Positions 35,656 through 45,554 of a DNA stretch of 64,000 nucleotides are shown here, piece after piece (positions within the stretch are counted from its first letter, which is position 1; each line of letters opens with the position of its first letter). This stretch comes from Guillardia theta CCMP2712 (lineage: Eukaryota > Protista > Cryptophyta), in contig NW_005434637.1 in NCBI RefSeq assembly GCF_000315625.1, forward strand, positions 254,495 through 318,494, read 5' to 3'. The notes beneath the pieces were generated by a model. It was not told the origin of the DNA. It worked only from the letters and a program-made list of their open reading frames with translations, and ran no database searches. The position numbers and the translations under genes were made by a program.

Positions 35656-37632
35656 ATGAAGCGACAAGTCGCGAGCGGTGGGGACGAGGAGGAGAGTTTT
35701 GCTGCTGCCAAACGATTCAGACGACTGCAACCCAGCGATGAAGGCTTCTGGAACTCTGTCAAGATATGTTACGGTCACTCAGACGCGGTGTCAAGCATCG
35801 CATGCTCTCCTATGGGAAACTTGATTGCATCAGGCTCTTGGGACAAGACAGTAAGGATCTGGAACAAAACAAGCCTCCAAGAGATATGCTGCATGAAAGG
35901 CCATCTACATCGAGTAACTTGCGTTGCATTTCCCCTAGATTCAACAGAAGAAGTTGTGGCTTCTGCTTCTGAGGATGGCACAATCAGAACGTGGGAGGTG
36001 AGGAGCGGAAGTGAATTGAGACGTTTCAAGGGGCATACAGGCAACGTCACAAGCATTGCATGGTCTCCCACCTCGGATAGGATTGCCTCAGCGTCTGAGG
36101 ACAAGACAGTGAGGATATGGGAGGTAAGCAGTGGGAAGGAAATCAAGATTTGTCGAGGACATCAAGACAAAATTACAAGCCTGGCATGGTCGCCCGATGG
36201 GACAATGATTGCCACGGGTTCTATGGATTATACAGTGAGGATATGGAGGGAGGACGATGAGAATGAGATCAAATGCTTTCGAGCAGATGAAGCAGGTCGA
36301 TGGATCCCAAGAATGGTACCTCTAGCGTGGTTTCTCAACAATGCCGACGGATCCGGCATAAGGAGCGTCGCATGGTCGACGTGCGGGAAGATGATTGCCT
36401 CAGGGTGCTCGGACACGACAATCAGAATATGGGATGTAAATAAAAACAAACAGATCCATTGCTGTGAGGGACACAAACGATTCGTTACCAGTGTCGCATG
36501 GTCTAAGAATGGAGATCTTGTCTCGAGTTCTGAAGATGGCTCAGTGAGGATATGGCAAAAAAGAAAGAGATTGTTTTTGTCTTGGCCACAAAATCTCTGC
36601 GGTCACAATCTGAATTCTGCTCCTGTGAACAGCGTTGCATGGTCTCCTAATGAACTGAGTATCGTCATGGGCTCCAGCAACAATACTGTCAGAATCTGGC
36701 AGAAAGATTGTTGGCAAGTTGTAAAAAGGTATGAAGTACACAAGAATGAAGTCGCAAGTGTTGCATGGTCCCCAGATGGACAGATGATTGCCACTGGATC
36801 TGAGGATAAGATGTTGCGGACACATAGTTTTACCAATCCAGACGAGAAAACCCTTTATGAAGGACATGCTGGAAGCGTCATGACCGTAGCATGGTCTCCT
36901 TGTGGAAGCCTCATTGCCTCGGGCTCGGAAGACAAGATCATCAGCTTGTGGAATAGCAAAAGCAGCGACAAAGTCAGAGACTTGGTGGGACATGAGGAGA
37001 CGATCACGAGTCTCTCTTGGTCTCCTGATGGGGCAAAGCTTGCGTCAGGGTCCTGGGACACGACTCTCAGGATTTGGAAGGTCAGCACCGGCAGGAAGGA
37101 AAGGTGCTTCAAAGGTCATGCGCATCGCGTGTCGAGTGTCGCTTGGTCTCCGGATGGGAAGACCATCGCCACAGCTTCATGGGACAAGACTGTGAGGATC
37201 TGGGAGGTCAGCAGCGGAAAGTCTAGCCAACACTGTTGCAGTAAAACTGCTGCCTTGACAAGCGTCGCTTGGTCACCAGACGGGAAGATGATTGTAACTT
37301 TGTCTGGTGAAGGAATTGTGGCTGTGTGGAAGGTAAGCAGCTGGGCTTCACAAAACTGTTTCATTCCAGACAGGACGGCTGTGGTGACAAGCGTTGCTTG
37401 GTCACCAGATGGAAGTACGATCGCTTGTGGGTGTGAGAATGGTCAGGTCACCATGTTAGATGTGATGATGGACCCCTGGACTAATGCCACAGTGACGACT
37501 CTGAAGCTTGATAGAAGCAAGAGAGCAAAGATCGTGCACTTGGCCTGGTCAAGTGATGCGTGTTATGTCGCTTGTGGGTCAGATGACGGCACCATCACCA
37601 TCATTCGGGACGCAGCCTCAGTCCTCAAGTGA
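35656..37632 (+). CDS. Intronless WD40-repeat protein, 14 repeats (probably a double 7-bladed propeller)
   Basis: 658-aa ORF of GH..V.SVAWSPDG..IASGS.D.TVRIW units, 14 counted by eye. Confidence 0.95.
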   Translation: MKRQVASGGDEEESFAAAKRFRRLQPSDEGFWNSVKICYGHSDAVSSIACSPMGNLIASGSWDKTVRIWNKTSLQEICCMKGHLHRVTCVAFPLDSTEEVVASASEDGTIRTWEVRSGSELRRFKGHTGNVTSIAWSPTSDRIASASEDKTVRIWEVSSGKEIKICRGHQDKITSLAWSPDGTMIATGSMDYTVRIWREDDENEIKCFRADEAGRWIPRMVPLAWFLNNADGSGIRSVAWSTCGKMIASGCSDTTIRIWDVNKNKQIHCCEGHKRFVTSVAWSKNGDLVSSSEDGSVRIWQKRKRLFLSWPQNLCGHNLNSAPVNSVAWSPNELSIVMGSSNNTVRIWQKDCWQVVKRYEVHKNEVASVAWSPDGQMIATGSEDKMLRTHSFTNPDEKTLYEGHAGSVMTVAWSPCGSLIASGSEDKIISLWNSKSSDKVRDLVGHEETITSLSWSPDGAKLASGSWDTTLRIWKVSTGRKERCFKGHAHRVSSVAWSPDGKTIATASWDKTVRIWEVSSGKSSQHCCSKTAALTSVAWSPDGKMIVTLSGEGIVAVWKVSSWASQNCFIPDRTAVVTSVAWSPDGSTIACGCENGQVTMLDVMMDPWTNATVTTLKLDRSKRAKIVHLAWSSDACYVACGSDDGTITIIRDAASVLK

Positions 37633-37841: not shown

Positions 37842-39383
37842 TCATGGTAGTATACATGTTTTGGAACCGATCTTGACCAGCTCTTGGCAGTCGTTCCGAA
37901 GTTCCACCACCTCGCCCGGTTGTGGCAGGCCATGGGGCCGGCTGGGCAAGCATCTCATCGAGTCCTTGCGGCTACTCAATTGCTGTATGAAGAAGTACAG
38001 TCCGTGTCGTCTCTGTGGAGGGAGACAGGTCAAGGTCAGCCCGTCGACGAGAATCGCAAGCGATCAAGTTACCTCTCTTCGCGCAGACTCGAGTCGGGCG
38101 ATGGCTGCGAAAGTATGTCATGCAGTCACCGCAGACAGCCGATCGTAACCTCGTAGTCTCCATCATGGGTTGACATGGACAAGTCTTCATGGCGGCCTGC
38201 CATCGCTCTCCCACCTCCAAGACTTCGGCACCTGCCTTGAGTGAGTGCATGCGCGTTCGCCAGCTGCATACACACCCGTGATGCCCTTTGCTCTTGTGGG
38301 CTGCGCAGAAGAACAGGCCGCATTTCTTGCACTGATACCTCTCCATCTTCCTTATGAACCAGTTCCTGCAGGTGTCAACGTCCAGTTATTGTTGAGCAGG
38401 CGCGCAACAACTGTCTGTACTTGCTGAAGAGCTTGTTGCAGTAATTGCACCTTTTCCTGATATTCGACCCGTGTGCTGCTGAACAAACATTCATCAGGAT
38501 GTCTTTTTGGGGGAGAAAGAAAAAATCCGCAGGATTTCAACTCACATGCTGAAAATTCTTCAATCGAAGTTGGCTGTATTTCCCTCTCTGTCTCTTGCAT
38601 GGATTGTCTAACAATCTTCTTTGCGGTCGCATGATCAAGAGTGATCGGAGCTCCTGCTGTGCCATCGGCATGCTGCTTCGGAATCTGAGCTTGAGCTTGT
38701 CTCCCAGTCTCGTTCGTTGGCCTTGTGCTGGATTGCGATCTTGCTGCTGGGCGCAGAGGATCAGGAAACAAAGAATAGCTCCATTTCGTCCTTACAATCC
38801 GTCCTCGATGGTTGGTCTTTCGATCTCTTCATGCCATTCCCCTGTTGAGAATTCTCAATAGTTTGCTGAAATAACATGATGCTGAGGTACCGATTGCTGC
38901 ACACAACCTCTTGCAGCTGCACCACCAGTAGAATTGGTATGGTACGGTCCCTTCACAGTCATTCAGCGAACCGCAAACACTCTCTCACTGTAACACCTCG
39001 TCCGAATCTTCGAAGCAATCTTCGAAGTCGTCAGCCAATGCTGAGTCGCTGTGGCTCTTCAGTAGTGATTCTACAATCAAGAAACATTCAGCAACCTTCA
39101 GATCCCACAGTCTGATGTCACCTTTGATTGATGGTGGAAATGTAGCACACTTGTTCGCTTGTTCTCCTTGAACCCCAGCGAGCGCTGATAGCGCTTGCAT
39201 GATTTCTGCTCTCTTGGCTTCCATGTTTGCCTTTCGAACTTTACTGCTGTCCGACCTCAAATTTTGAAGGGATGTGTGCGATTTTGACTTGGTCGGTCCA
39301 TTTGCTTTCTTTGACGCAGTACCGCTGGCGTTCTCATTTGACTGCGACTGGACCAAGTTCGGCACTCTTATCTTTTTCACCAT
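37842..39383 (-). CDS. Multi-exon region with a helical segment and an AN1-like zinc finger; either the tail of the upstream EF-SAM gene or a separate gene
   Basis: Spliced RKRCNYCNKLFSK/NWFIRKMERYQCKKCGLFFCAAHKSKGHHG/C fits C-x2-C...C-x2-C-x4-C-x2-H-x5-H-x-C. Boundaries are uncertain. Confidence 0.55.
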
Positions 39384-39399
39384 CTTCCCAACTTGCAAC

Positions 39400-41476
39400 C
39401 TTGCATTCAGAGTTCCCTAGCACCCAAATATATCAATGCAAGGAGTTTGTTGAAAAACACTTCAAATATGAAGAGGAAGAACGCGCACCGAAACGTGAGT
39501 GTGACACTTACAAACTAATATATAGACGATTAGGAAAGAATTTGGGGTGTGCGGGGTTGGGGACTGAGAAACAAGAGGGAAGGACAAACACGCTTGACAA
39601 CAGAAATTGGGGCATACTTCCTGCAAGGTCCGAATCGTATCATTGAGGATACCCAAGCGAAATGCACCAAAGGCGAGTGGCGCCAAGAAGCCAAAAAACG
39701 ACAAGATGAGGTTCAAAACCTGGCAATCGTTATCGAAGCTGCAGGTGAAAGTGAGAAAAATTACCTGCCAGAGATCGAAGCTCAGCAACGTTGACCCCCA
39801 GTATTTCCATCCTCCAAACAGCCCGGTCCATTTGTTCTGGACTCAACAGCTTCAGCAAGATGAGCAACCCATTGGGACGCTACCGTGTCTGAGAAGCAAC
39901 CAGAGTCTAGAATCTCACGGCAGATAGCCTGTCAACCAAGATAGTTCGGGAGAGAATTGAATGCCAACAAGTAAACCTCCGTCAGGTGAGCTCGCTTCAT
40001 GTCGCTCTTAATCCCTAGGATGGTATGAAGCAATCTACAGACTGTCACGTCTGGAGCTCACAGTCAGCATCACAGCACCTCGGGTTCTGTATTCCGATGC
40101 TCCACAGTGTCAGGCCTCGAACATCATGTTTCTTGAAAGCCGGTATGTAGTCCTTTGATAAGAGGATTACCGGAGTATCTTTCAACACTCATTGTTACCT
40201 CCATGTTTGTTGGGACACACTTGTCATCCGAAAGCCATTTGATAAGTTCTTCATTGCTCAGTTTGCTCAGTTTGCTTCGCCAAAAACGAGTCTTCAGCTC
40301 CCACATCTCTTGTCTTGTGATCTACAAGGCCATTTCAGCCCCTTCCAGCTCGTGGAAGCAACGAGTTGTGCCGTACCTGTCCATTTCTATCCGGATCCAA
40401 ACAATGAAATGCTTCTAGAACTCCCACACCTCCTCGAGCCTGCAAAAATTTCATTCCAAGTCTCATGCTTATTCCCATACCTGCTGACGAACAAATTCCT
40501 CTTCACTGACTTGACCATCATCGTTCTGGTCCTGACCCCCTTCAAACAAATGAGCTTTGAATCTACCAACACCACTTCTCTACCTTCGAAGAATGATCTC
40601 GAATCGACATGTTTGATAGCATCTTCCAATTTTTCTGCACAAAGCACATTCACGTTGAACACCGAGTCAGCAGATTGTACCTTCAGTCTTGTTCTCCCTA
40701 GTAGTCGGAGCCATCAAATCAGCTGAAACAGGAGGTCCCAAACAACCAAGTCCTTCAATTTCCCTGTAGAGAACCATCCGGGAGACATCAAAACTTCCGG
40801 AAAAGGAGACCCTGGCACTACCTGCAGATAGCCTGCACTAGAGTTCGCCTGACCACTGGGTTCCCGATCTTGAGCTCGTTCTTGAGGAGCCGAGGGCTGC
40901 GGACTCCATACTCCCACAGGGACAATCCATTCAGCCCTGCATGCTCGTTCAACGCAAGTTCGTGTCATCGAGAAGAAGCACCTGCTTGCTTGAACTTGTT
41001 CGCATACTTGCTCATGTCAGTGGGCACGCACTTGGGATACATGAGCCAGTCTAGAACTTCTTCAGAGTTCAGCTGGCAACCATTGGTCAGCGCCATGGGA
41101 GGACGGGAAACAATCTGCAACACACTGACCTGCGAGAGTCTGCTCCGGTAGAATCGCTTCTTCAGAGCGTTCTGCTCCTCCTTCGTCACATACCCATTCA
41201 TGTCGCCGTCAAGACAGGCAAAGGCTGAATCCGAACCCCCCCTGCTCCCATCAACAAACTCTTGCCTCGTGACCCTGTGTGTCATGGTAAATATCCCAGG
41301 TCGTTGAGTTACAAAGGAACATGGTTTCACCTTCCATCCCTGTTCTTGTCTCTGATTTCAAAATCATCCAAAGGGATGTTCTCTTCGTCATCAGAGGCAA
41401 ACACGACCAAAACAAAATGAAGGCAAAGCCCCAGCAGTGCGAAAAATCGGGTTCGAAATCTCGATTGTGACTTCAT
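39400..41476 (-). CDS. STIM-like protein: signal peptide, two tandem EF-hand-pair/SAM modules, then transmembrane segment(s); more than 12 short exons
   Basis: Leader MKSQSRFRTRFFALLGLCLHFVLVVFA. EF loops DKNRDG/RVTRQE, DGDMNGYVTKEE, DQNDDGQVSEEE, DPDRNGQ/ITRQE. SAM1 LNSEEVLDWL..KYANKFKQA/GLNGLSL..LKIGNPVVRRTLVQAICR/EIEGLGCLGPP. SAM2 LSNEELIKWL../DYIPAFKKHDVRGLTL../LGIKSDMKRAHLTE/AICREIL. TM VLNLILSFFGFLAPLAFGAF. Confidence 0.8.
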
Positions 41477-42427: not shown

Positions 42428-43816
42428 CTACAAGAAGAAACGAAGGGGCAATAGTCTTAAGATATGGATGAGGATGGGACATGACGCGATTCCGTCACGA
42501 GGGAGAAGCGCCAAAAGACATTGAGAAGCCTCGCACTTGAGAACTCCGATCCATAAGAGCCTCTCCAGCCGCCATGGCATTCGCTGCCGGCAAGCTAACA
42601 GTGTGTGCCGAGCACATGGGCCACAGCCGACAGCCGACAGCCGAACCTCCTTGAGATCTTCCAGCATCAGCTTCGGGAGCAGCTGAAACTCGACCTCGCA
42701 ACTCGCATGCCCCAGCTCACCAGTTGCGTTACTTCCCCAGGAAAACGCCATCTGTGCGTTGGCGTCCACGACCATCGTGTGGCTGTGGCCACAGACGAGG
42801 GAACCGACGTGGGCGCGCTCAATCCCCAGCACCAACGCGGGCACAAGGCTGTTTGACTTGGAGCCGATGCCCAGCTGTCCGCTATCCCCTTGACCGGAAC
42901 AGAAGACCCTGCCGGAGGACGTGAGAAAAGCTGTGTGACTGAAACCGCAAGCCAACTGAACCACCCGCTCCTCCCCCCTCCAGGGCGTCTCGACTCTGCT
43001 TGGGATCAGCTTGGGCTCAAGACTCCCGATAGCAAGTTGTCCCTCCTCGTTCCTTCCCCATGCAAAGAGAGAACCATCAGATAGCATGACCACCGCGTGT
43101 TGCCCTCCGCACGCCACATCTTGCAGCTTTGGCCTGATGGAGGATTGCTGGGGGATCTTGACAACTTGAGGGGTCGGGCTGACGATGGTGTGCGAAGAAT
43201 AGCCTATTCCAAGCTGCCCGCAGTCATTGCGACCAAAGGAAAAGACTGAGTGCGCAGAGATAACAACTGAGAAGCAATCACCGCACGAAGCTTTCTCGGC
43301 ACCGCACCCTCTCAGACTCTCAAGCAGCTGCGGTGTCCGAGTGTGATCATATTGCAAGCCCAACCCTAGTTGACCGTACATGTTCCATCCGAATGACCAC
43401 ACATCTCCTTCCTCCGTCGTCAACACTGCATGCGCTCTTCCGCACGCGAGAGAATTTATCCTTACCCCCCTCAACGGCAAAAGTTCTCTTAGCTCATGCG
43501 ACACGCAAGTGCTGAAGCGTGAGCTCTTGTGATCGAGGTTTCCGCATATCCATGTCCGAGTTTCACCTGCTCTGAGTCCATGAACGACAGAGAAGTCGGA
43601 GCCTGCGGCAATGCTTGTTTCACTTGAGCCTGCTTCCAAGTCCTCAACCCTCTTCTCCACTTCATCTGCATATGGCACTCGCGCCCATCGCCGCATGACA
43701 TGAGGAAACCATAGCCGCTTCCTCTTCTCTCCAGGCTCCTCCTCTTCTCGTCGTTCCTCATGCATGTCCGGCCCAAGTTGGCCGCAATGATTCTGCCCGA
43801 TGCCATAGACAGGCAT
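42428..43816 (-). CDS. Intronless RCC1-repeat (UVR8/HERC-like propeller) protein with a short C-terminal helical motif
   Basis: Repeated ACGxxH...VWSFGWNMYGQLGLG, FGRNDCGQLGIG, WGRNEEGQLAIG, SGQGDSGQLGIG, WGSNATGELG. Start taken at MPVYGIGQN (43816). Confidence 0.93.
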   Translation of the reverse strand: MPVYGIGQNHCGQLGPDMHEERREEEEPGEKRKRLWFPHVMRRWARVPYADEVEKRVEDLEAGSSETSIAAGSDFSVVHGLRAGETRTWICGNLDHKSSRFSTCVSHELRELLPLRGVRINSLACGRAHAVLTTEEGDVWSFGWNMYGQLGLGLQYDHTRTPQLLESLRGCGAEKASCGDCFSVVISAHSVFSFGRNDCGQLGIGYSSHTIVSPTPQVVKIPQQSSIRPKLQDVACGGQHAVVMLSDGSLFAWGRNEEGQLAIGSLEPKLIPSRVETPWRGEERVVQLACGFSHTAFLTSSGRVFCSGQGDSGQLGIGSKSNSLVPALVLGIERAHVGSLVCGHSHTMVVDANAQMAFSWGSNATGELGHASCEVEFQLLPKLMLEDLKEVRLSAVGCGPCARHTLLACRQRMPWRLERLLWIGVLKCEASQCLLALLPRDGIASCPILIHILRLLPLRFFL

Positions 43817-44019
43817 TTTCCAACCAAGTACCGGCAGTTTCACATTAGCCCCGCATTGGTGATTTAAATTTGAAACTTGATCTATCAAAAAGAACTTTTA
43901 TGCAATTGGTTTTCAAATGCAAAATGCAAGCCCTGCTTTCGAAATTTTTAATGGCCATCCGCTTTTGAACCCCGCAACGGCCTCGTTTTATTACTCAAAG
44001 TTGAGTTAAAATCGGGACC

Positions 44020-44375: not shown

Positions 44376-44797
44376 TACCCCCCTCAGACCCACCCCACCC
44401 AGTACGAGTTTCACAAAAATCAAATTCCGAGAAGGTTGACAAACAACCTCATTTTGAAATTTCAAGGTTCCTCACGCTTGTTTCTCATAGGACAAGAAGG
44501 GCATACTTTGAAAGTTTTGAAGCATAACCGCAGAATTACTTTAAATTTGGGGCATATAGACCCCTAAGATGAAAATCTTATGGAAGGTATTAAGAGAAAG
44601 GGGGGTCGCTGGTTTAAGGGGGTCATAAGAATTCCGATAGGGGTTATCTAATACATGTAAGTAAGTATTTTTGAATATTGACCAGCACTTTTTCAGTGTA
44701 ATTTGTATATTTTATAACAATTTTCGAAATTGCTTCAATATTAGACACAATGATTTCCACTTCTAGGAAACTGTCGCACAGCACCCGCCTCTCCGCC

Positions 44798-45554
44798 ATG
44801 CTCAGAAGCGCTCTCCTCCTCCTCCTCGCTCTCGCCTGCGTCTCCGCATTTGCCCCTGCTGCCCTCCCAGCTCTCAGATCAACTCGCAAGGCTCCCATCA
44901 GGTATCCACCAACCAGACCATGTGCTGTGCTTGTCTTGTTCCCCCTCGAAGGAAATCCTCGTCACACGCAGTGCGACTCTCCGTTCCGCCCTCTTTCTTG
45001 TGAAAAAACGTTCCGCGTGTCAAATCTCCTTGCAAGTGCAAAAACATTTAGACCATATCATCGAGACAAAACCTAGGCAGACTTCAAACTAAAATTTTCT
45101 CAGCAGCGTGAGAATGGCTGGAGCCGACAGGATGCCCCCAGGCCCTAAGGGACGTGGTCCATTCGGACCTGAGGACACCTTTGTCCTTCCGGACGGTGTG
45201 CATCTGAAACTCTTCATCTGCTGATGTCCTCCTCCTCCTCCTCCTCCTCCTCCTCCTGCCTCTCCTCCTCCTCCTCCTGCCTCTCCCCCTTCCCCCTCTC
45301 TTCCTTATATATTTCTTTTCCTGTCTGATGACAGTAATTCAGGTCGCTCTTACACCCCTGGAGATGCCTGCACTGATGACATCTACGGTGCTGCTCTCGC
45401 CAACCCTGTCGTGCTTCCTGATGCCTTGAAGCTCACCGTCGGAGCTGGAGTGAGTTCAAATTTGTCGAATGCAGCGGAACTAACTAGACCATAGTTGTTG
45501 GGCTTCTCCGTCCTCGTTCCTACCATTCTCATCAAGGTGATTGGAGGATATTAA
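44798..45554 (+). CDS. Small nucleus-encoded, plastid-targeted single-TM protein (4 exons), function unknown
   Basis: MLRSALLLLLALACVSA-FAPAALPALRSTRKAPIS/VRM is a signal peptide + Phe-motif transit peptide. Mature part AGADRMPPGPKGRGPFGPEDTFVLPD/GRSYTPGDACTDDIYGAALANPVVLPDALKLTVGAG/LLGFSVLVPTILIKVIGGY*. All three introns are GT-AG and phase-consistent. Confidence 0.85.

What the first reader, a model, noticed from the sequence alone, without database searches (positions are those of the whole stretch)
39400..41476. Hidden STIM-like Ca2+ sensor with a tandem-duplicated EF-EF-SAM module in an alga
Seen: hand-splicing of tiny minus-strand exons gives signal peptide-EF-EF-SAM-linker-EF-EF-SAM-TM. 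SAM1 (SRLSQLNSEEVLDWL..KYANKFKQAGLNGLSLWEYGVRSPRLLKNELKIGNPVVRRTLVQAICREIEGLGCLGPP) follows the STIM1 luminal SAM pattern as I recall it (NWTVDEVVQWL..QYEETFRKLQLSG..LKMTDRSHRQKL..LFGPP), including the terminal GPP. Known: STIM proteins carry one luminal EF-SAM unit, gate Orai channels in store-operated Ca2+ entry, and are best known from animals and their unicellular relatives, with only sparse reports elsewhere. Inference: this is an ER (or chloroplast-ER) luminal Ca2+ sensor with two sensing units, implying an undescribed store-sensing pathway in this lineage.
Basis: partly seen in the sequence, partly recalled or inferred. Interest (0 to 1): 0.9.

Follow-up and report, generated by a model that had tools for sequence, protein, structure and literature searches.

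The report
Cryptophyte membrane protein with doubled STIM-sensor
A cryptophyte alga transcribes a gene for a membrane protein with two copies of a unit resembling the calcium sensor of animal STIM proteins, but it lacks the part STIM uses to open Orai channels, so the sensor unit probably exists far outside animals and feeds a different output.

Summary
The gene is real and longer than reported: 24 exons, window 41476-37976 (minus strand), 733 aa. It is Guillardia theta GUITHDRAFT_109065, annotated only as hypothetical/EF-hand. Contigs of two probable RNA runs and a transcript-derived protein confirm the exon chain. Architecture: signal peptide, (EF-EF-SAM)x2, transmembrane helix, mostly disordered tail, AN1-like zinc finger. 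The module resembles STIM specifically: a family SAM profile ranks STIM2 first in the PDB (E 5e-6), and Foldseek's top three hits are the STIM EF-SAM structures. It is still not a STIM. It has no SOAR/CAD or long CC1, both EF loops of each module are canonical (no hidden EF-hand), and each module has four invariant cysteines, implying disulfides. Homologues occur in Hanusia, Cryptomonas and unassigned metagenomic eukaryotes, one with four modules. The duplication is old and the zinc finger is conserved. The genome also has Orai-like and IP3R-domain genes. Best reading: a luminal or surface Ca2+-binding receptor related to STIM, signalling by a non-SOAR route. ER residence, store sensing and Orai gating are untested. 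The scan noted this same stretch before, but not on other DNA.

The parts
37976..41476 (-). Whole coding region, 24 exons, 733 aa (G. theta GUITHDRAFT_109065; transcript protein P0001). The transcript contig starts at 41742.
41396..41476 (-). Signal-peptide-like segment, aa 1-27 (basic n-region, hydrophobic core, then acidic residues)
   Evidence: hydropathy 2.16; similar but unconserved hydrophobic N-termini in most of 12 homologues; no SignalP available
40730..41368 (-). Module 1: EF-hand pair (canonical loops at aa 43-54 and 71-82), linker helix, SAM1 (aa 97-168) ending in GCLGPP; Cys69, 112, 165, 173
40594..40729 (-). Inter-module linker, aa 178-207 (low pLDDT, one N-x-T sequon at aa 190)
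39893..40593 (-). Module 2: EF-hand pair (canonical loops at aa 214-225 and 245-256), SAM2 (aa 271-342); Cys243, 286, 339, 347
39798..39830 (-). Trp/Gly-rich membrane-proximal motif (aa 354-364), conserved in two-module homologues
39654..39767 (-). Single transmembrane helix, about aa 375-397
   Evidence: hydropathy 1.98; helix 373-424 in the AF2 model
39372..39653 (-). Short cytosolic continuation helix, aa 398-424, net basic (6 K/R against 2 D/E in aa 398-430); 27 aa against about 110 aa for STIM1 CC1
38450..39371 (-). Mostly disordered, poorly conserved tail, aa 425-644, with two isolated helices (464-487, 606-621); no SOAR/CAD
38228..38449 (-). AN1-like zinc finger, aa 645-685 (C-x2-C-x17-C-x2-C-x4-C-x2-H-x5-H-x-C)
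   Evidence: Pfam zf-AN1 E 0.037 here and 2.6e-4 in P0015 (both below cut-off); AN1 structures top but weak in PDB (E 0.03-0.05); second half conserved in P0015/P0032 and in locus L023/L024

Best explanation
A type I membrane protein whose N-terminal half lies in the secretory lumen (ER or chloroplast-ER) or outside the cell. It carries two EF-EF-SAM units descended from the same ancestral unit as STIM's sensor. Shown: transcription, splicing, architecture, EF-SAM fold and absence of SOAR. Inferred: each unit binds two Ca2+ (four canonical loops in all). The four invariant cysteines form two disulfides; since only one of them lies in the EF pair, two intramolecular bonds would have to tie the EF pair to the SAM region. 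The unit would then answer Ca2+ or redox changes with a limited shift or altered SAM-SAM self-association, not STIM-like unravelling. A change in clustering passes through the TM and short juxtamembrane helix to a tail whose only conserved element is an AN1-like zinc finger, which by analogy recruits ubiquitin-proteasome/p97 or trafficking partners. It works like a STIM on the input side but has a different output.
For: Exon chain and full ORF. SAM profile against 177,635 PDB sequences: STIM2 first (5.3e-6), SAMD12 3.4e-4, STIM1 2.1e-3, C. elegans STIM 0.026; the match extends colinearly into the pre-SAM helix and shares the STIM-type spacing in mid-SAM where SAMD12 needs a 4-residue gap; STIM2 still first with the SAM core alone (6.7e-6). 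AF2 module pLDDT 91, pTM 0.84. Foldseek ranks 1-3 are 6PW7 (3.8e-6), 2K60 and 2L5Y. Atlas top rows are STIM1 clusters (TM 0.57, rmsd 3.5 over 113 residues). EF ligands are almost invariant in 27 modules; Cys69 and Cys112 27/27, Cys165 and Cys173 in all 18 modules long enough to contain them. Zinc finger kept in three divergent lineages while the tail between is unconserved. No SOAR; tail disordered.
Against: No experiment on Ca2+ binding, localisation or partners. Global structural similarity to STIM is moderate (TM 0.41-0.48, rmsd about 6 A; VIA Z 7.9-8.5, tied with unrelated SAM domains). The EF pair does not match Pfam EF-hand_STIM1. The AN1 assignment is below Pfam's cut-off, and FYVE scores similarly. 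The four-module homologue P0002 has no finger and only a short acidic tail, so signalling through the finger is not universal. Disulfide pairing could not be read from the model.
Confidence: 0.5

Rival explanations
1. Functional STIM equivalent: an ER-resident store sensor that gates the cryptophyte Orai through an unrecognised tail element (juxtamembrane helix, helix 464-487, basic patches or the zinc finger).
For: STIM-like input unit with STIM topology. The genome has an Orai with the TM1 selectivity glutamate (L001) and 12 IP3R-domain matches. No other STIM, SOAR or paralogue was found in the genome. Papers say Orai-bearing algae need an unknown sensor (PMC11085791, PMC8318260).
Against: No CC1/SOAR; the tail is disordered and unconserved. 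As read from genomic DNA (not transcript-checked), Orai L001 ends about 20 residues after its last TM, which leaves little room for the C-terminal STIM-binding helix of animal Orai. Cysteines may lock the unit. The family was found only in cryptophytes and unassigned contigs, so it cannot explain Orai gating in diatoms or green algae.
Confidence: 0.15
2. Structural or buffering role: a disulfide-stabilised, Ca2+-loaded repeat that acts as a membrane-anchored Ca2+ buffer, spacer, adhesion or periplast/surface protein. Ca2+ is constitutively bound and nothing is sensed.
For: Module number varies (2 or 4; P0002's four modules are an independent expansion), as in ectodomain repeats. All loops are canonical and would be saturated at luminal or seawater Ca2+. 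Invariant cysteines. No KDEL or C-terminal di-lysine signal.
Against: A conserved cytosolic zinc finger, a conserved membrane-proximal Trp motif and stable identity of module 1 versus module 2 across lineages suggest specific coupling across the membrane. Expression was low in the one raw-read run (13 reads in about 6% of X15), which is not what an abundant buffer would show, although that is one sample.
Confidence: 0.25
3. Convergence (a question of ancestry, independent of the functional rivals): a calmodulin-like EF pair and a generic SAM fused independently of STIM, and the resemblance comes from being the same two common domains in the same order.
For: The EF pair is closer in sequence to calmodulin/NCS-1 than to STIM. 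Identity to STIM is 16-22%. SAMD12 scores between the STIMs. Any EF+SAM model would favour the only EF+SAM entries in a whole-module fold search.
Against: The SAM-only profile, which has no EF contribution, still ranks STIM2 first with STIM1 and C. elegans STIM close behind, ahead of nearly all other SAM domains in the PDB. The linker is colinear with STIM, the signal peptide/lumen/TM topology is unusual for SAM domains and shared, and further EF+SAM clusters exist in oomycetes and another eukaryote group.
Confidence: 0.2

Closest known systems
STIM1/STIM2 (animal stromal interaction molecules; EF-SAM structures 2K60, 2L5Y, 6PW7)
   Same: Signal peptide, luminal EF-EF-SAM unit with colinear linker helix and STIM-type SAM spacing, single TM, helix continuing into the cytosol.
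   Different: Two units instead of one (four in a homologue); both EF loops canonical; four invariant cysteines per unit; no 110-aa CC1 and no SOAR/CAD; AN1-like zinc finger near the C-terminus; predicted EF-SAM packing differs (rmsd about 6 A to the solved structures).
Oomycete FN3 + SAM cluster in the ESM Atlas (565 aa, automatic name 'Calmodulin', 70 members)
   Same: Third-best structural match to the module, over residues 4-146 (TM 0.54, 112 residues), so apparently the same EF-SAM unit outside opisthokonts.
   Different: Carries fibronectin-III domains. I could not retrieve its sequences, so its topology, cysteines and tail were not compared.
AN1-type zinc-finger proteins (ZFAND1, Cuz1, ZFAND2/AIRAP)
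   Same: Cys/His spacing of the C-terminal finger; weak top PDB hits 1WYS, 7YAB, 1X4V and 5IJ4.
   Different: Here a single finger on the tail of a type I membrane protein, with a longer spacer; below Pfam cut-off; P0015 has an altered first Cys pair.
Calmodulin / NCS-1 EF-hand pairs
   Same: Best sequence matches of the EF pair; canonical 12-residue loops.
   Different: Those are soluble cytosolic proteins with no SAM; the inter-loop segment here is about 8 residues shorter.

Membership tests
STIM | N-terminal signal peptide and single TM (type I) | tested here: met
   Hydropathy peaks at aa 7-30 and 373-397, basic residues after the TM; by hydropathy and homologue pattern only, no SignalP/DeepTMHMM
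STIM | Luminal EF-hand pair followed by a SAM domain | tested here: met
   Pfam SAM_2 above cut-off for P0001; AF2, Foldseek and profile searches
STIM | One canonical plus one hidden (non-Ca2+-binding) EF-hand | tested here: not met
   All four loops canonical and conserved in 27 modules; no match to PF25578 EF-hand_STIM1
STIM | A single EF-SAM unit | tested here: not met
   Two units here, four in P0002
STIM | Cytosolic CC1 (about 110 aa) and SOAR/CAD Orai-activating domain | tested here: not met
   No PF16533 hit in the protein or above cut-off in the genome; only 27 helical residues follow the TM, then disorder; STIM definition from PMC4835918. The genome search is exon-wise and can miss split domains.
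STIM | Non-covalent EF-SAM interface that unravels and oligomerises on Ca2+ loss | not testable with these tools
   Four invariant cysteines suggest disulfide constraint; needs biophysics
STIM | ER residence and gating of Orai on store depletion | not testable with these tools
   Orai-like genes present; no localisation or interaction data
AN1-type zinc finger | C-x2-C-x(9-12)-C-x(1-2)-C-x4-C-x2-H-x5-H-x-C ligand pattern (consensus from memory) | tested here: inconclusive
   All eight ligands in order, but with a 17-residue spacer; Pfam E 0.037, below cut-off; FYVE E 0.004-0.013, also below cut-off
Complex-plastid (bipartite presequence) protein | Signal peptide followed by Phe at +1 and a basic transit peptide (rule from memory) | tested here: not met
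   Signal peptide is followed by Ser and an acidic run

The most novel reading that the evidence does not exclude
The STIM sensor unit predates the split between animals and cryptophytes, and this protein is a real ER store sensor that couples to the cryptophyte Orai (or another Ca2+ channel) through a SOAR-independent tail. It would be the first identified store sensor of an alga, with tandem, redox-tunable sensing units.
Probability: 0.15. Interest if true: 0.92.

Novelty: new variant of a known kind. Interest (0 to 1): 0.7.

Why it matters
[quoted passage not shown] Papers on diatoms and Chlamydomonas note Orai without STIM and predict an unknown sensor (PMC11085791, PMC8318260). This protein, together with the oomycete EF-SAM-FN3 cluster, suggests that the luminal EF-SAM unit is an older, mobile module that was paired with different outputs, SOAR being only one. 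It supplies a concrete, expressible candidate for asking what EF-SAM did without SOAR and whether algal Orai is store-operated, and a natural two-Ca2+, cysteine-bearing, tandem version of a heavily studied sensor. Caveat from memory, unverified because the papers are not held: Cai and colleagues reported STIM/Orai homologues in some non-animal protists, so 'STIM-like outside animals' may not be wholly new.

Tried and rejected
My first hand-splice used the wrong acceptor for exon 7 and broke the frame; the RNA contigs gave the right AAG acceptor at 40540. My 718-aa end was wrong, because two introns lie beyond the stretch laid. Exon-by-exon Pfam scans found only weak EF hits and no SAM, which explains why the domain was overlooked. 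Word-based homologue searches did not reach STIM or the oomycete proteins, so no tree including STIM was possible. Atlas feature searches gave only a sub-threshold lead (0.85 and 0.76). The weak genome hit to EF-hand_STIM1 (L015) is a kinase with an EF-hand, not a STIM; the weak SOAR hit (L014, E 0.06) was not pursued. P0011 and P0023 are chance hits. No paper mentions STIM, Orai and Guillardia together. Joined step: exons were joined only inside scripts, to check the frame, hydropathy and the internal repeat. No database was searched with my joined model; searches used window references or the stored protein P0001 and its relatives. Neighbouring genes (RCC1-repeat, WD40) show no functional link.

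Full report
Observation. Contigs from two probable RNA runs (X1, X2) skip the introns, while DNA run X11 does not. With those joints the frame stays open across 21 GT-AG introns, and exon lengths fit the contig coordinates. A search with a window reference returned P0001, an MMETSP transcript-derived protein of Guillardia theta, and its cluster mate GUITHDRAFT_109065 / XP_005832000.1, named only 'hypothetical' or 'EF-hand domain-containing'. P0001 equals my model over 711 aa and adds two small exons, giving 24 exons, 733 aa and a stop at 37978-37976. The genome is 87.1 Mb in 669 contigs. Exons were joined only inside scripts for frame and repeat checks; no search used the joined model.

Anatomy. 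Signal-peptide-like segment (aa 1-27); module 1 (aa 37-177); linker; module 2 (aa 208-348); a conserved Trp/Gly motif; one TM (aa 375-397); a 27-residue basic helix; about 220 mostly disordered residues; an AN1-like zinc finger (aa 645-685). The modules are 48% identical (score 310 against a shuffle maximum of 59). All four EF loops are canonical. The residues after the signal peptide are acidic and lack the +1 Phe of plastid presequences (rule from memory), so the default secretory route is likely. There is no KDEL or C-terminal di-lysine signal.

Is it STIM-like? Yes, on the sensing side. A profile of the family's linker plus SAM ranks STIM2 first among 177,635 PDB sequences (E 5.3e-6), then SAMD12, STIM1 (2.1e-3) and C. 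elegans STIM (0.026). The alignment runs from the pre-SAM helix through SAM and shares the STIM spacing in mid-SAM, where SAMD12 needs a gap. With the SAM core alone STIM2 stays first (6.7e-6). AlphaFold2 models module 1 at pLDDT 91. Foldseek's top three hits are the three STIM EF-SAM structures, and the Atlas's top two are STIM1 clusters (TM 0.57). Limits: identity is 16-22%, TM to the solved structures is 0.41-0.48 at rmsd about 6 A, VIA Z 7.9-8.5 ties with unrelated SAM domains, and the EF pair alone resembles calmodulin and NCS-1 more than STIM. I put common ancestry of the unit at about 80%.

Is it a STIM? No. [quoted passage not shown] Neither is present: no Pfam SOAR hit in the protein or above cut-off in the genome, and the tail is disordered and unconserved. 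The hidden EF-hand is replaced by a canonical one, and PF25578 does not match. Each module has four cysteines that STIM's unit does not show in the alignments: the first two are present in 27 of 27 modules, the last two in all 18 modules long enough to include them. One lies just before the second EF loop and three lie in or after the SAM. If they form two intramolecular disulfides, as expected in an oxidising compartment, one must join the EF pair to the SAM region. It would hinder the unravelling by which STIM1 is activated (PMC11506743).

Family. Named members are G. theta, Hanusia phi and Cryptomonas curvata; about twenty more come from unassigned metagenomic contigs. In a tree of 27 modules, all first modules group together, all second modules group together, and P0002's four modules form their own group. 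The duplication is therefore old, and copy number has expanded independently at least once. P0015's second module and P0002's modules are long branches, so their placement is less sure. The second half of the zinc finger recurs in P0015/P0032 and downstream of the TM in locus L023/L024, although the tail between is unrecognisable. P0002 lacks it. The gene is single-copy in G. theta. An oomycete cluster with FN3 and SAM matches the whole module structurally (TM 0.54), and another eukaryotic SAM plus EF cluster appears as a weak lead, so the unit is probably wider than cryptophytes.

Context. G. theta has two Orai-family matches. L001 keeps the TM1 glutamate equivalent to human E106 but, read from genomic DNA, has only about 20 residues after its last TM; L002 is divergent and lacks the glutamate. 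Twelve IP3R-domain matches suggest ER Ca2+ release. Presence in one genome does not show coupling.

Mechanism. Most likely (0.5): a luminal or surface Ca2+-binding receptor, in which Ca2+ or redox state changes module conformation or SAM self-association, and clustering is read by the cytosolic zinc finger, by analogy through ubiquitin/p97 or trafficking partners. Rivals: a constitutively Ca2+-loaded structural or buffering protein (0.25), or a true store sensor gating Orai without SOAR (0.15). Convergent origin of the unit is a separate question (0.2). Shown: gene, splicing, architecture, fold, missing SOAR, conserved cysteines and finger. Inferred: topology, Ca2+ binding, disulfides, sensing, partners.

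Novelty. I found no paper describing this protein or a tandem EF-SAM. Published statements hold that EF plus SAM is unique to STIM (PMC11506743), that STIM arose near animals (PMC7016017), that oomycetes lack detectable STIM (PMC9694693), and that Orai-bearing algae lack a known sensor (PMC11085791, PMC8318260). Papers by Cai and by Collins and Meyer on early STIM evolution were not held; from memory, Cai reported STIM homologues in some protists, which would lessen the surprise. Verdict: real, a new variant of a known kind, interest 0.7.

Noticed in passing
ESM Atlas cluster, row 3 (Oomycota, 565 aa, 70 members): FN3 + SAM proteins automatically named 'Calmodulin' match the whole EF-SAM module (TM 0.54), although oomycetes are reported to lack STIM and Orai (PMC9694693). 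Possibly a second non-animal EF-SAM family.
   Followed up: no
ESM Atlas cluster, (243 aa, 61 members, SAM_2 97%, EF-hand 20%): Another eukaryotic SAM + EF-hand cluster (one member assigned to Chlorophyta); score 0.85, a lead only.
   Followed up: no
L003:432-2669, L004:262-2499 (P0002): Intronless marine metagenomic homologue with four EF-EF-SAM modules, a C-terminal TM and a short acidic tail without the zinc finger; host unknown.
   Followed up: partly
L001 (G000:C24:542406-542648, minus) and L002 (G000:C5:961205-961756, plus): Two Orai-family genes: one keeps the TM1 selectivity glutamate but seems to have a very short C-terminal tail; the other is divergent and lacks the glutamate.
   Followed up: partly
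G000: Twelve matches to the IP3R/RyR N-terminal domain PF08709, suggesting an expanded IP3 receptor-like family in this alga.
   Followed up: no
window 38421-38366: The NCBI model P0024 has three extra residues at the exon 20/21 junction, inside the zinc-finger spacer, relative to the transcript-supported P0001 form.
   Followed up: partly
window 42428-43888 (minus) and 35656-37632 (plus): Flanking genes: an RCC1-repeat protein upstream and a 14-repeat WD40 protein downstream, convergent with this gene; no evident link.
   Followed up: partly
window 44750-45076 (plus): ORF with a signal peptide followed by an SAFAP motif, typical of a nucleus-encoded plastid protein; no Pfam hit in this exon.
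   Followed up: no
PMC11685980: A coccolith-matrix protein of Gephyrocapsa oceanica (group 92) has a signal peptide and two SAM domains and is acidic; worth checking for relation to this family.
   Followed up: no
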